Positions 3,385 through 64,000 of a stretch of DNA of 64,000 bases are shown here, piece after piece; the first letter of the stretch is position 1, and the number at the start of each line of letters is the position of its first letter. This DNA is from Oculina patagonica (Eukaryota). The stretch is from positions 3,038,001-3,102,000 of the forward strand of contig NC_135761.1 in assembly GCF_052425735.1 (NCBI RefSeq), read 5' to 3'. The notes beneath the pieces were generated by a model. The model ran no database searches. It was not told the DNA's origin and was given only the letters and a program-made list of their open reading frames with translations. The position numbers and the translations under genes are program-made.

Positions 3385-16276
<12,892 letters not shown>

Positions 16277-23235: not shown

Positions 23236-23866
23236 GTGAAGAAGTTATTCAACATGACACGAGCGTGGGACAAAGAAAAAATCTGAGTCCCCGACGGGAA
23301 TCGAATCCATGGCCTCCCAGATACCGGTTGGGCGCTCTAACCAACTGAGCTACGAGAGACTCGTTGTGAGCTGGGCCATTTACTCGGTTGATATATGACA
23401 CGCGTCTTGCATACTGCTAGGATCAGCAATGTCACAACGAGTCTCTCGTAGCTCAGTTGGTTAGAGCGCCCAACCGGTATCTGGGAGGCCATGGGTTCGA
23501 TTCCCGTCAGGGACTCAGATTTTTTCTTTGTCCCACGCTCGTGTCATGTTGAATAATTTCTTCACTATTTATCACCGAGTTTGAAATTTACCATCTTTAT
23601 TATTTACTACACATTTGATGATTTCGACTTTGCTGATCCTAGCAGTATGCAGGACGCGTGTCATATATCAACCTAGTAAATGGCCCAGCTCACAACGAGT
23701 CTCTCGTAGCTCAGTTGGTTAGAGCGCCCAACCGGTATCTGGGAGGCCATAGGTTCGATTCCCGTCGGGGACTCAGATTTTTTCTTTGTCCCACGCTCGT
23801 GTCATGTTGAATAATTTCTTCACTATTTATCACCGAGCTTGAAATTTACCATCTTTATTATTTATT
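23236..23866. mobile_element. tRNA-like ~258-bp unit array: one inverted partial copy plus ~1.7 tandem copies
   Basis: Minus copy 23236-23433, then plus-strand units with 258-bp period; A box tagctcagttgg, B box ggttcgattcc. Confidence 0.85.
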
Positions 23867-23869
23867 AGG

Positions 23870-59900: not shown

Positions 59901-61055
59901 TGAAGCGAGAAATCAACAGTAAACCAGCAAGCGTATAGAAAGCTCGCAAATTTCTCAGAGTTTGTGTTGTTAAGAGAATTGGATAGAAAAATTCCCTGTA
60001 AACATACTTAACCAAAATTAAGCCAAAATGATAATCTTGTGTCTTTATTCATGTATATACCAGATACTGTTAATTTTATGCTTTTTCAGAAGGATTTACA
60101 GTTTAGTTTTGCAGGGGCTTGGGCTTCTGGTAGTTTTAAGTTCCTGTTATATTTTATGACTTGTATCAGTTGTTGTTTTGTCTCATAAAAGATTCAACAT
60201 ATGAAAATCATGCGGTAAACCGTAATTTTCATGTCGAATTCGTTAACAATGAATTTTGATGAATTGAGAAAAGATTGATGCGGTTCGTTCTCTTATATAA
60301 TTGCTTTCATTTAATGTAGTTTTTCGCAGTTTTTTGAACGAATTTATTTTAATGCTTTAATTTTGTGATGTTTGCTAGAATGATGTGCACGTACCATAAT
60401 GAAGCTGTCTGTATTTTGTAATTTTATCTCTTGAGGGGGCCTCTTTTTCACCCTCATTTTGCAAGCTCACCAAGGTGAAACGACCGCGAGAGTTGCTGTT
60501 CTTTTGTCGGGAGAGTCCCAGTCAAAATAAAGGTCATTTGATGCTTGTAATTGGACTGATTTTGATTGGTCTTTATTCAAATCCAGAAGATTCCATTCGC
60601 AAACGAACCTTTAGCTACAATCAGGAAAAAATCCCAAAGTTCCTTTCCTACATAGTATTGTGCAGTGTGTATAAGTACCACTTGAAGCCCCAAATTTACC
60701 CCCGGGGAATTTACCCAATGTTTTTTGTTTCTATTTTGTGCCGGATGGTAGGATTCAAGTGTGCTCGTAGCCTGAAATAAAGCTCTAAAATTAATTTGGC
60801 CAAATTAAATGCTTGAAACTGTTGGAGGTATTAGTGGACGAGTTCATCGACTTTTGCATAGATAAGATAATTCTTATGTAACACGTTTTTCTTTGATTTT
60901 TTTTCTTTATTAAATGCATCCAGCCACTTAAGTTTAATCAAATACATGTAAAATACGACAATGTGTAACAGTAATTGACATATTACATTCTGTTAAAAGG
61001 TGTCTTATCCAATTGAAATAGATCTATTTGATGTTTGGGCTCGATTGGGCACTTA

Positions 61056-62315
61056 GTCCCTCAACAGACTACACATTTAGTTGTCGACAACTATCTGTTA
61101 TCGACAACTAAATTTATTGACCACTTACGTAATGTGCGAGACGAGATATCGACAATTAAACGCTACGCTTTTGTCCGTTTTCCCGTGTGTGGGAATGGTT
61201 GCTTTAGTTGTCGACAACTTCCCTAACTGCGTTGTCAACGGTCAGTGTTTTTTCTATAAAAGCATGCGTAGTGAACGTTAGTTCCCATGCTTACGCTGGC
61301 CTGACTAAGTTATCGACATTCTTGTCCCCAGAGCCGCTTGTTCCTCTTAGCCGGCAGAGCCTGGGGCACGAAGAACAAGTGGCTCTGGGAACGCGTGATT
61401 TGATTGGCTAGATTTTTAACAAAGATAATTTAAATCTAGCCAATCAAATCAACCGTTGTAAAATCCCTTATAACAAAGGGATTTTAAAACGGTTGATTTG
61501 ATTTGCCAAATTCAAATTTCCGTTTTTAAAATTCTAGCCAATCAAATCATGTGTCCCAGAGCCACTTGTTCCTCGTGTCCCAGGTTCAGCTGGCTAAGAG
61601 GAACAAGTGGCTCTGGGGACGAGAATAATTTATTGACAGCTAATACTCCAATGTGTGGAATGCTTGTATCGGACAGAATTAGTAAAGAATATTATTCTAC
61701 ATGACACGAGCGTGGGACAAAGAAAAAATCTGAGTCCCCGACGGGAATCGAACCCATGGCCTCCCAGAATACCGGTTGGGCGCTCTAACCAACTGAGCTA
61801 CGTGAGACTCGCTGTGAGCTAGGCCATTTACTAGGTTGATATGTGACACGCGTCCTGCATACTGCTAGGATCAGCAATGTCGAAATCATCAAATTTGTAG
61901 TAAATAATAAAGATGGTAGATTTTAAGCTCGGTGATAAATAGTAAAGAATATTATTCTACATGACACGAGCGTGGGACAAAGAAAAAATCTGAGTCCCCG
62001 ACGGGAATCGAACCCATGGCCTCCCAGAATACCGGTTGGGCGCTCTAACCAACTGAGCTACGTGAGACTCGCTGTGAGCTAGGCCATTTACTAGGTTGAT
62101 ATGTGACACGCGTCCTGCATACTGCTAGGATCAGCAATGTCGAAATCATCAAATTTGTAGCAAATAATAAAGATGGTAGATTTTAAGCTCGGTGATAAAT
62201 AGTAAAGAATATTATTCTACATGACACGTTGTATCGGACAGAATTAGTTGTCGATAACATTTATGGTCGAAACTAGTAGTTGTCGTCCACTAAATGTCTA
62301 GTCTGTGGAGGTCCT
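61056..62315. mobile_element. Host TIR element carrying two nested insertions
   Basis: Imperfect TIR cctcaacagactacacatttag / ctaaatgtctagtctgtggagg; nested elements at 61317-61627 and 61681-62228. Confidence 0.6.
61681..62228 (-). mobile_element. 2.1 tandem copies of the 260-bp tRNA-like unit with a 17-20-bp TSD
   Basis: Units start at 61681, 61941 and 62201 and are near-identical; direct repeat ttgtatcggacagaatt(agt) at 61664-61683 and 62229-62248. Confidence 0.9.
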
Positions 62316-62813
62316 TACTCATTTGCAGTTGTTCGTAAAACAAAAATACAATACTTTAAAAGCATACAAGTGGAGCTCCCGGTTATTTATTCTTTACTGG
62401 ACAAATTATAATGTTTCCATTCTGGTAAATAAGCGGCTAAACAGTAAACGTACGGTTGCTCATAGGTGAAACAAAATAAGCTCACAGCAGAACAAACTAT
62501 CTGTTTGTTGTGTCATGTTAAAAGTGAATTTAGTTAGCGACTTCGGTTGCTAAAGCTATTTTATCTTTTGGTAAGTCAGTTAATTAGTCAATTAGATAGT
62601 TTACCTAGTCAGTTAGTTAGTTACTAAGTTAATTAGTTAGTTAGTTTTCATTTAACGGTTTTGATGATTCCTAGTTTTTTCATCTTTACAGCTTAGCTAT
62701 TTTATTAGTTAGTAAATATTTAACACTGATGTAAATTTTTAATGTAAATTCCATTCTATATTAATATTTTACTGTAAAGCGCCACGAGGCATGGATGTGG
62801 CGCTATAAAAATC

Positions 62814-62861
<48 letters not shown>

Positions 62862-64000
62862 AATTAAGTGAAACCGGTAAAAACAATATATATTTATATA
62901 TTCTATAGAAAACAGGTAAATGTGAAAAGGTTAAAAAAATAGATTAGTGTGTATCAATCTGCAGCTTACTTTTATAAGCAACCTGGAAGTAAATGCCTAC
63001 ATTGTGCGGTGCCAGAAAATTCCATACTCACCCCAAGAATGGTCAATGGAAATTCCGAAGGGGAGGGAGGTCGCAATAGCCCAAATTTTTAAAAAAAAGT
63101 ATGAAGCTAAACTCAAAGTTCCAGGGGGTCGGAAGGGTCCAAACCAAAGAACCATCCTTGGGGTAGGTATAGATATTTTTTTGGAACCACACATTAAAAT
63201 TAAACTGCCATTACACTATTGAAGACACTTTAGCCTGTGCTGGAGTAAATTTATGGTCTGCGATAATAATTTCGTAAATTCTCTGTAATTTCATTATTTT
63301 TATTGAAACAAAATATTTTTGTCATGAACCCCAGAATGGTTTCAAAACTTACATGTAATAAAGTGTCAGTATTCACATGTAGCCTTATTAGGTTCTGGGA
63401 TGTTCACATTACATAAATACCTAGCTAAAAAGGCACTAAAGTATATTCAGGTTTAAACTGGCAACATGTGGGAATTAATCATGTGACGATTTTATTACAT
63501 TAACACAATGTGTATTTTTGAGTTCACTTTGACTAAGAGGAATGTCATTGCACTCTTCAAGTCACCTGTAAATAGAAAAAAAAAACTATTTATTTTGATA
63601 AAATTGTTATTTTTCCAGCATGCAGACTGTATATTAAATGGCCTTTTTCAGTGTGTGAAAAAAACCCTGACTGCTTTCATGTTGGGCTTGTGGATTCAAT
63701 AATTTTTTCCACTTGCTAGATAGCCAAATGACATTTATGGATTTTTATTTTTTGTTGTTGATCTTTCCAGAGAAACATGGGACCTTGGGTAAGCATATAA
63801 TGGTTTCACCTTGCCCAGTCTACCTGGGTCAGGCCAGGAAGAAATCAATTTTCTTTGCACCCTTCCTTTCATTAATCATAATTTTGCAGAAAAATGTCAG
63901 TCTTCATTTGAATTTTTTACATTGCTAGCTGTAGTTTAAAATGCTACTGAAGGCCATCCAACAATTGAAAATACATGCCTTAAAAAATGTCAAACAGCTT

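What the first reader, a model, noticed from the sequence alone, without database searches (positions are those of the whole stretch)
61664..62248. tRNA-cloverleaf unit mobilised as near-exact tandem multimers with a TSD (retrozyme-like architecture, no recognisable ribozyme)
Seen: a 260-bp unit is present as 2.1 near-identical head-to-tail copies, bounded by a 17-20-bp direct repeat (ttgtatcggacagaatt). The tRNA-like part sits in the middle of the unit, with ~130 nt upstream of it. It has A and B boxes, D and T arms, an extended gagtctc/gggactc acceptor stem and a non-canonical anticodon loop, and it is immediately followed by a T6 run that should terminate Pol III. Established: an ordinary SINE starts at its tRNA head and does not carry sequence upstream of its internal promoter. 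Multimeric insertions with TSDs are the pattern of animal non-LTR retrozymes, which are copied from circular or multimeric RNA and monomerised by hammerheads. Inference: this could be a small non-autonomous retroelement copied from a circular or concatemeric RNA, in which the tRNA mimic (an RNase P/Z substrate) or the structured motif gacattgctgatcctagcagtatgcaggacgcgtgtc replaces the ribozyme.
Basis: partly seen in the sequence, partly recalled or inferred. Interest (0 to 1): 0.8.

Follow-up and report, generated by a model that had tools for sequence, protein, structure and literature searches.

The report
tRNA-bearing passenger of coral Penelope retrotransposons
The 2.1-copy repeat is a real, recent insertion of a small non-coding jumping element that carries a tRNA-like gene, and its insertion scars across this coral genome match Penelope-like retrotransposons rather than an ordinary SINE or a ribozyme-driven circle.

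Summary
Observation confirmed. Window 61680-62228 holds 2.11 head-to-tail copies of a 260-bp unit (99% alike) between a 16-20-bp target duplication. Each unit carries a tRNA-like gene on the minus strand, followed at once by T6.

The unit is a young family: 617 unit junctions genome-wide, copies 96-100% alike. In 68 insertions read here, outer ends are fixed at two sites 42 nt apart (A and B) and inner ends vary. Of these, 39 are head-to-head pairs; 37 of the 39 join one A end to one B end and have a 10-18-bp duplication. Both target strands are cut before (G/T)TT.

This is the published signature of Penelope-like elements (PLEs): partial tandems, an adjacent inverted truncated copy, and a 30-40-bp "tail" at one end. 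Relatives 70-87% alike in coral-host metagenome contigs follow the same rules. They share an invariant 40-nt core and conserved A box, B box and T6. No hammerhead or other Rfam ribozyme was found.

Circular RNA and RNase P/Z replacing a ribozyme are unsupported. The helper PLE was not identified and transcription is not shown.

Other readers of this scan noted tRNA-cored elements with Penelope-style scars elsewhere in this genome. I found no paper describing tRNA-bearing PLE passengers.

The parts
61664..61683 (.). Left copy of the target-site duplication, ttgtatcggacagaat plus tagt. The tagt is shared with the element's first bases (microhomology).
61680..62228 (-). The insertion: 2.11 units of 260 bp. 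The RNA template sense is the minus strand. The fixed cDNA-start end (site B) is at 61680. The variable, 5'-truncated end is at 62228 (unit position 29).
62229..62248 (.). Right copy of the target-site duplication.
61732..61808 (-). tRNA-like gene of unit 1, of tRNA-Thr(GGT) type in relatives. It has A and B boxes, a shifted and extended acceptor stem, and an 8-nt anticodon loop.
61992..62068 (-). tRNA-like gene of unit 2.
61723..61728 (-). T6 run directly 3' of the tRNA-like gene (Pol III terminator consensus). It is repeated at 61983-61988. It is conserved across nearly all of the 38 aligned relatives.
61898..61939 (-). The 42-nt 'tail' between cDNA start site A (61898) and site B (61940). 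It is internal in this insertion and repeated at 62158-62199. In two-armed insertions of the family it is found at one outer end only.
61845..61884 (-). Invariant 40-nt core, TTCGACATTGCTGATCCTAGCAGTATGCAGGACGCGTGTC in RNA sense. It lies 14-53 nt 3' of site A and is repeated at 62105-62144.
23236..23867 (.). Older copy of the same family (93-95% alike). It is a two-armed head-to-head insertion with a B end on the left and an A end on the right. It carries three tRNA-Thr(GGT)-like genes with 7-nt loops.
13518..13692 (-). Decayed relic of a related family, 70% alike over unit positions 34-215.

Best explanation
The repeat is one recent insertion of a high-copy, non-coding retroelement that is copied into DNA by the reverse transcriptase and endonuclease of a Penelope-like element (PLE).

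Shown:
- The family's insertions have outer ends fixed at two sites 42 nt apart (A and B) and variable inner ends. They run from under one unit to 4.6 units in one arm.
- More than half are head-to-head pairs inside a single 10-18-bp target duplication, almost always with one A end and one B end.
- Both target strands are cut just 5' of (G/T)TT.

Inferred:
- A dimeric endonuclease/reverse-transcriptase complex nicks both strands 12-16 bp apart.
- Each 3' end primes cDNA on tRNA-sense RNA at site A or site B, often with 1-4 nt of pairing to ...ACUA.
- Synthesis runs through one or more units and stops at a variable point. The two cDNAs are then joined.
- If only one cDNA survives, the result is a one-armed insertion like the one in this window (B start, 2.1 units).
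- Because reverse transcription starts internally, RNA lying 3' of the start site is not copied. That RNA includes the invariant 40-nt core, which I take to be the enzyme's recognition element. A daughter copy inherits the core only if the cDNA runs on into the preceding unit. Partial tandems are therefore the replicative form, and the tRNA-like part seems to have 130 nt 'upstream' of it.
- The tRNA-like gene with A box, B box and T6 is a conserved Pol III unit derived from a tRNA-Thr-type gene. Its T6 lies 45 and 87 nt 5' of the cDNA start sites, so the mobilised template must be a read-through or Pol II transcript of a tandem copy. What the Pol III unit contributes is not settled. My guess is a promoter or open-chromatin signal, or a separately expressed small RNA.
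For: Family size and age:
- Copies are 96-100% alike at dozens of loci.
- A 44-mer spanning the tail-to-B junction has 617 matches against 0 for the control.

Census of 68 insertions:
- 39 are two-armed. 37 of these are A+B, none are A+A or B+B, and 37 have a duplication of 10 bp or more (35 of them 10-18 bp, mostly 12-14; the two longest values, 28 and 30 bp, are probably local repeats).
- 29 are one-armed: 15 with an A end, 13 with a B end and 1 other.

Cut-site composition over 70 nicks: T or G 79%, T 69%, T 61%, against a background T of 30%.

Published PLE hallmarks that match:
- 5' truncation, partial tandems, an adjacent inverted truncated copy, and a 30-40-bp tail at one end only (PMC8557442).
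- Two internal reverse-transcription start sites that bound the tail, cleavage and extension of both strands, an ATT cleavage motif, and required RNA lying 3' of the start site (PMC11167929).

This genome holds many GIY-YIG-encoding loci: 860 first-look candidates, and all 150 scored are above the Pfam cut-off. Many lie in head-to-head pairs.

Relatives 70-87% alike in coral-host metagenome contigs show the same A'+B' rule. They also conserve the core, tail block, A and B boxes and T6.
Against: - No autonomous PLE sharing sequence with the element was identified.
- No exact match of the core or of the tail block lies within 20 kb of the GIY-YIG places in the listed stretch of contig C1.
- In vitro, the anole PLE starts at a site not homologous to the primer. 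Here 1-4 nt of microhomology is common.
- Most one-armed insertions (20 of 29) show no clear duplication. The window's own copy does.
- Transcription is not shown. RNA-library contigs hold parts of the unit, but that could be DNA carry-over of a high-copy repeat.
- The core shows no covariation, so its hairpin is only a prediction.
Confidence: 0.8

Rival explanations
1. Retrozyme-type cycle. A multimeric transcript is cut into monomers by host RNase P and RNase Z at the tRNA mimic, or by an unrecognised ribozyme in the conserved core. The monomer is circularised and then copied by rolling-circle reverse transcription into multimers.
For: - The units sit in tandem with target duplications, as in animal non-LTR retrozymes (PMC7229834).
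- Most rare variants seen in more than one unit of an array are present in all of its units (70 sites in all units against 14 in only some).
- Arrays of up to 4.6 units persist in spite of heavy 5' truncation, which calls for some lengthening step.
- The 40-nt core is invariant across families that are 67% alike per column.
- Inner ends are about 2-fold enriched just 3' of the tRNA-like part, at unit positions 26-60.
Against: - No ribozyme family matches at E<=1, nor at gathering score in 10 relatives. Neither strand of the unit holds the CUGANGA motif of the hammerhead core.
- Inserted arrays keep whole tRNA-like parts.
- There is no pile-up of ends at the tRNA 5' boundary, and no sharp one at the 3' boundary.
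- Adjacent units in L009 and L021 differ at diagnostic sites.
- By textbook enzymology, RNase P and RNase Z leave 5'-phosphate and 3'-OH ends. The RtcB-type ligase used by retrozymes joins the opposite kind of ends.
- Hammerhead cleavage is dispensable for PLE insertion in vitro.
Confidence: 0.1
2. An ordinary tRNA-derived SINE mobilised by a LINE. On this view the inverted arms come from twin priming and the tandems from later unequal crossing-over.
For: - It has a tRNA-derived module with A and B boxes.
- Its target duplications vary between 10 and 18 bp.
- It has 3' microhomology to the target.
- The topology is the same as in L1 twin priming.
Against: - The tRNA part is not at the 5' end.
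- T6 lies upstream of the cDNA start sites.
- There is no poly(A), microsatellite or LINE-like 3' tail.
- 57% of insertions are two-armed, and the outer end of the inverted arm is a fixed site, not a random internal one.
- The strict A+B rule and the 42-nt tail are described as unique to PLEs.
- Tandem units lie inside the target duplication, so they arose at insertion.
Confidence: 0.05
3. A DNA-level element: a foldback or MITE transposon with tandem-repeat arms, or a dispersed satellite.
For: - Many copies have inverted arms built of tandem units, as foldback elements do.
Against: - The duplication length varies from 10 to 18 bp, where a transposase would give a fixed length.
- The arms are unequal, the inner junctions vary, and the two outer ends differ by 42 nt.
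- One-armed copies such as the window's own carry a duplication.
- Arrays are short (4.6 units at most) and lie at hundreds of dispersed sites.
Confidence: 0.03

Closest known systems
[quoted passage not shown]
   Same: - 5' truncation and partial head-to-tail tandems.
- An adjacent inverted truncated copy.
- A tail of about 40 nt at one end only.
- A target duplication of variable length.
- A T-rich cut motif on both strands.
- Two internal cDNA start sites.
   Different: - It has no ORF.
- Its unit is only 260 bp.
- It carries a complete tRNA-like Pol III unit.
- No sequence link to a specific autonomous PLE was shown.
- It does not insert into (TA)n microsatellites, as Naiad and Hydra elements do.
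Animal non-LTR retrozymes (Cervera and de la Pena 2020, PMC7229834; Li et al. 2026 preprint, 10.64898/2026.07.22.740005)
   Same: - Non-coding tandem units of 150-450 bp with GC below 45% (43.8% here).
- Dispersed copies with long target duplications.
- Present in stony corals.
- Proposed to depend on PLEs.
   Different: - It has no hammerhead, which is the defining feature of retrozymes.
- A circular RNA is not shown.
- It carries a tRNA-like gene plus T6 instead.
tRNA-derived SINEs, including superfamilies with a conserved central domain (MetaSINEs and V-SINEs, PMC4824008)
   Same: - A tRNA-Thr-like module with A and B boxes.
- A strongly conserved internal block shared by diverged families.
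- High copy number.
   Different: - The tRNA module is internal to the copies.
- The terminator follows the module at once.
- The ends, tail and inverted arms are of PLE type, not LINE type.
- Identity of the core with any named SINE domain could not be checked, because Repbase and Dfam were not available.
Helenus, Ajax and Cassandra: non-autonomous LTR retrotransposons carrying small-RNA-gene-like sequences (PMC10886601)
   Same: - A Pol III gene-like module carried by a passenger of a retroelement class that is not a LINE.
   Different: - Those elements are LTR elements with the module inside the LTR.
- This one uses PLE-type target-primed insertion.

Membership tests
PLE-mobilised element (PLE insertion signature) | 5'-truncated copies arranged as partial head-to-tail tandems. 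| tested here: met
   Inner ends vary and arms reach 4.6 units. The window copy has 2.11 units.
PLE-mobilised element (PLE insertion signature) | An inverted 5'-truncated copy directly adjacent, inside the same target duplication. | tested here: met
   39 of 68 family insertions are two-armed. So is the second copy in the window, at 23236-23867. The insertion under review is one-armed.
PLE-mobilised element (PLE insertion signature) | A 30-40-bp tail present at one end only, equal to the interval between two cDNA start sites. | tested here: met
   The tail is 42 nt. 37 of 39 pairs are A+B and none are A+A or B+B. Relatives follow the same rule.
PLE-mobilised element (PLE insertion signature) | A variable-length target duplication, with cleavage of both strands at a T-rich motif. 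| tested here: met
   Duplications are 10-18 bp, mostly 12-14. The cut motif is N^KTT over 70 nicks.
PLE-mobilised element (PLE insertion signature) | Sequence shared with an autonomous PLE around the reverse-transcription start. | tested here: inconclusive
   GIY-YIG loci are abundant, but their DNA could not be read. No exact match of the core or tail block lies near the C1 GIY-YIG places.
Animal non-LTR retrozyme | A type I hammerhead ribozyme in every unit. | tested here: not met
   Rfam at E<=1 on the region. Rfam at gathering score on the window and on 10 relatives. A core regex over 190 loci found only 4 off-unit hits.
Animal non-LTR retrozyme | Short AT-rich tandem units with target duplications. 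| tested here: met
   GC is 43.8%.
Animal non-LTR retrozyme | Expressed as a monomer-sized circular RNA. | not testable with these tools
   Only assembled contigs of RNA libraries were available. They cannot show ends, strand or circles.
tRNA-derived SINE (LINE-dependent) | A tRNA-derived head at the 5' end whose Pol III transcript spans the whole element. | tested here: not met
   The A and B boxes are present. But the module is internal, and T6 lies 45 and 87 nt 5' of the cDNA start sites.
tRNA-derived SINE (LINE-dependent) | A 3' tail of LINE type, poly(A) or simple repeat. | tested here: not met
   Copies end at ...TTYACTA with no A-rich or repeat tail.
Foldback or MITE DNA transposon | Fixed-length target duplication and equivalent terminal inverted repeats. 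| tested here: not met
   Duplications are 10-18 bp, the two ends differ by 42 nt, and the arms are unequal.
Satellite DNA | Long arrays at few loci, without target duplications. | tested here: not met
   Hundreds of dispersed sites, 4.6 units at most, with target duplications.

The most novel reading that the evidence does not exclude
The tRNA-like gene with its T6, together with the invariant 40-nt core, forms a ribozyme-free processing and recognition system. Host tRNA enzymes (RNase P and RNase Z) would cut multimeric transcripts into unit-length RNAs, which are circularised and copied round and round by a PLE reverse transcriptase. On this reading, a protein-processed tRNA mimic does the job that hammerheads do in retrozymes.
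Probability: 0.07. Interest if true: 0.85.

Novelty: new variant of a known kind. Interest (0 to 1): 0.5.

Why it matters
SINE-like passengers are defined by their dependence on LINEs. Animal passengers of Penelope-like elements are known as hammerhead-bearing retrozymes. This is a young, abundant family, part of a superfamily shared with other coral DNA, that has PLE scars but no ribozyme and carries a conserved tRNA-type Pol III unit instead.

I found no description of such elements in the searchable literature. The scan's own notes show similar tRNA-cored PLE-style elements elsewhere in this genome.

The family also gives a natural data set for a poorly understood mechanism. It has two cDNA start sites 42 nt apart, priming from both nicked strands, a strict one-tail rule and a symmetric N^KTT cut site. 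These mirror what was seen in vitro for a lizard PLE.

It also bears on genome annotation. Repeat pipelines are likely to call such copies tRNA genes, SINEs, satellites or palindromes.

Tried and rejected
**Helper element**
- None of the held loci (0.7 Mb) or the window encodes a GIY-YIG motif.
- The ten longest ORFs in the fetched loci are host genes or a LINE reverse-transcriptase fragment.
- No core or tail 22-mer lies near the GIY-YIG places on contig C1.

**Ribozyme**
- Rfam searches and a hammerhead-core regex were negative.

**Structure**
- RNAalifold on 38 relatives gave no compensatory pairs. The blocks are too invariant for covariation to show.
- Single-sequence folds of either strand are only mildly better than shuffles (z about -2.3).

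**Rolling circle against linear multimer**
- The shared-versus-private variant count does not discriminate.
- The heterogeneous arrays L009 and L021 lean against a monomer circle, but later crossing-over could also explain them.

**Expression**
- Only Logan contigs were on offer. Parts of the unit occur in contigs of three RNA libraries from two studies, but transcription, strand and ends cannot be read from them.

**Literature**
- Keyword and sequence-string searches found no paper on tRNA-bearing PLE passengers. Repbase and Dfam could not be consulted.

**Second window copy**
- I found no target duplication for the older copy at 23236-23867.

Full report
**1. The observation**

The sequence is as described.
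- Tandem Repeats Finder reports a 260-bp period, 2.1 copies and 99% matches at 61680-62228.
- The array is bounded by ttgtatcggacagaat(tagt) at 61664-61683 and 62229-62248.
- ARAGORN and Rfam find a tRNA-like gene in each unit, on the minus strand. Its T6 run follows directly.
- Rfam finds no ribozyme at E<=1 on either strand of 60500-63500.

**2. It is a large, young family**

- A search of the window's own genome gave 2,163 first-look candidates. The genome is 529 Mb, and this scan's earlier notes call it a stony coral. The 40 candidates scored gave matches 87-100% alike; the full-length units are 96-100% alike.
- A 44-mer spanning the unit junction has 617 matches, against 0 for the reversed control.
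- The window holds a second, older copy at 23236-23867 and a decayed relative at 13518-13692.

**3. Anatomy of 68 insertions**

I read the 29 best-matching loci plus 40 loci taken in genome order from the 44-mer list. Each was mapped to the unit.

Unit coordinates below start at window 61680, on the plus strand.
- Outer ends fall at only two places: site B (positions 1-6, TAGTGAAGAAT...) and site A (positions 219-222, TAGTAAATAAT...). These are 42 nt apart.
- Inner ends vary.
- 39 insertions are head-to-head pairs. 37 of them have one A end and one B end. None is A+A or B+B. 37 have a flanking direct repeat of 10 bp or more. In 35 of them it is 10-18 bp, mostly 12-14. The two longest values (28 and 30 bp) are probably local repeats.
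- 29 insertions are one-armed (15 A, 13 B, 1 other). The window's copy is one of these: B start, inner end at position 29, and a 16-20-bp duplication.

In the pairs both outer ends are the fixed ones, so the target 3' ends must have primed synthesis inward. The template is therefore the tRNA-sense RNA. Sites A and B are cDNA start sites, and the variable ends are 5' truncations.

Pooling both strands (70 nicks), the three bases 3' of each nick are T/G 79%, T 69% and T 61%, against 30% T in the background. The cut is thus symmetric, N^KTT, on both strands and 12-16 bp apart. One to four bases of pairing between primer and ...ACUA are common.

**4. What this matches**

Craig et al. 2021 (PMC8557442) list the hallmarks of Penelope-like elements:
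- heavy 5' truncation;
- partial tandems;
- an inverted truncated copy directly adjacent;
- a 30-40-bp 'tail' at one end only.

Frangieh et al. 2024 (PMC11167929) showed for an anole PLE that:
- the protein cleaves and extends both strands;
- it prefers an ATT motif;
- it starts reverse transcription at two adjacent internal sites whose interval is the tail;
- it needs RNA 3' of the start site;
- it does not need hammerhead cleavage.

Every one of these genomic hallmarks is met here. The genome also has many GIY-YIG-encoding loci, often in head-to-head pairs. A LINE with twin priming would give random outer ends for the inverted arm. A DNA transposon would give a fixed duplication length.

**5. 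A superfamily in other coral DNA**

Several of them carry animal host genes.

The relatives they hold:
- are 70-87% alike to the window's unit;
- have the same tandem and inverted layout and the same one-tail rule;
- carry tRNA-like parts that are better cloverleaves, up to 47.6 bits over the whole Rfam model. ARAGORN reads most of those it calls as tRNA-Thr(GGT).

In an alignment of 38 sequences with 67% mean column identity, four blocks are nearly invariant:
- a 40-nt core (TTYGACATTGCTGATCCTAGCAGTATGCAGGAYGCGTGTC);
- the A and B boxes;
- AGATTTTTTCTTTGTCCCACGCTCG, which holds the T6;
- a block within the tail.

The core has 1,883 matches in this genome. No hammerhead appears in 10 relatives. 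No covariation could be measured.

**6. How it most likely works**

The endonuclease/RT complex cuts both strands and starts cDNA at A or B.

The invariant core lies 14-53 nt 3' of site A. That is the same geometry as the required RNA 3' of the start site in the anole element, so I take it to be the recognition element. This is inference.

Internal initiation means the core is not copied from the unit where synthesis starts. Only cDNAs that run on into the next unit carry a complete start-plus-core module. This explains why partial tandems are the propagating form. It also explains why the tRNA-like part seems to have a long 'upstream' sequence.

The T6 lies 45 and 87 nt 5' of the start sites. 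Arms contain up to four of them. The template is therefore unlikely to be a plain Pol III transcript.

The strong conservation of the A box, B box and T6 says the Pol III unit matters to the element. How it matters is open.

**7.

Circular RNA and processing by RNase P/Z are not excluded, but nothing here supports them.
- Arrays keep whole tRNA-like parts.
- Inner ends show no pile-up at the tRNA 5' boundary. Around the 3' boundary there is only a broad 2-fold excess over positions 26-60.
- Adjacent units in L009 and L021 differ at subfamily-diagnostic or rare sites.
- RNA evidence is limited to assembled contigs, which show parts of the unit in three RNA libraries but cannot show transcription, strand, ends or circles.

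**8. Novelty**

PLE passengers are known as hammerhead retrozymes (PMC7229834; preprint 10.64898/2026.07.22.740005) and as non-autonomous Chlamys elements (PMC8557442). tRNA-like modules are known in SINEs and in some non-autonomous LTR elements (PMC10886601).

I found no paper on a ribozyme-free PLE passenger bearing a tRNA-type Pol III unit. Repbase and Dfam could not be checked.

Other readers of this scan noted tRNA-cored PLE-style elements elsewhere in this genome. Two followed-up cases carry a hammerhead as well. I did not test those notes.

I rate this a new variant of a known kind, of moderate interest.

**9. Limits**

- The census covers 68 of several hundred insertions.
- Most one-armed copies lack a clear duplication.
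- Expression is untested.

Noticed in passing
window 61320-61625: A nested, near-perfect palindromic element (MITE-like) lies directly upstream of the insertion. It gives only sub-threshold miRNA-precursor-like Rfam hits. It has high contig depth in runs X1 and X16, so it is itself a repeat family.
   Followed up: no
window 61666 -> 62233 (run X17, table 5c): One RNA-library contig from a coral metagenome joins the left flank to the right flank and skips the whole insertion, with 5 other letters in between. This may be an orthologous or allelic empty site. Depth is only about 5.
   Followed up: no
L022:1459-2496 (G000 C5:7389382-7390419): Inside one arm, unit positions 13-141 are repeated three times with 8-nt spacers. 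This is an odd sub-repeat, possibly from template jumps during reverse transcription.
   Followed up: no
G000, places listed: The genome has 860 first-look GIY-YIG candidates. Ten places lie in open frames of 1,371 aa with identical scores. Many hits sit in head-to-head pairs 1-5 kb apart, as expected of Penelope-like elements.
   Followed up: partly
L177:4371-5219 (-): A 5'-truncated LINE-type ORF (RVT_1 plus DUF6451) abuts a two-unit array of a relative in a metagenome contig. This is probably a neighbouring insertion, not a helper.
   Followed up: partly
L179:9980-10021, L151:1456-1481, L084:3269-3321, L165:1795-1853, L098:2969-3046: The invariant core, or its first half, occurs in contigs where BLAST with the window's unit aligns only the core region. 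In L179, L151 and L084 no tRNA-like part is evident in the 260 nt shown downstream. The core may therefore be a module shared by several element families.
   Followed up: partly
window 62574-62646 and 62816-62860: Simple repeats (AGTT)n and (TTA)15 lie just downstream of the insertion.
   Followed up: no
G000 C1: In the listed part of contig C1, a sister subfamily with ...AAAATTTACC... in the tail block has more matches than the window's ...AAAATCTACC... variant.
   Followed up: no
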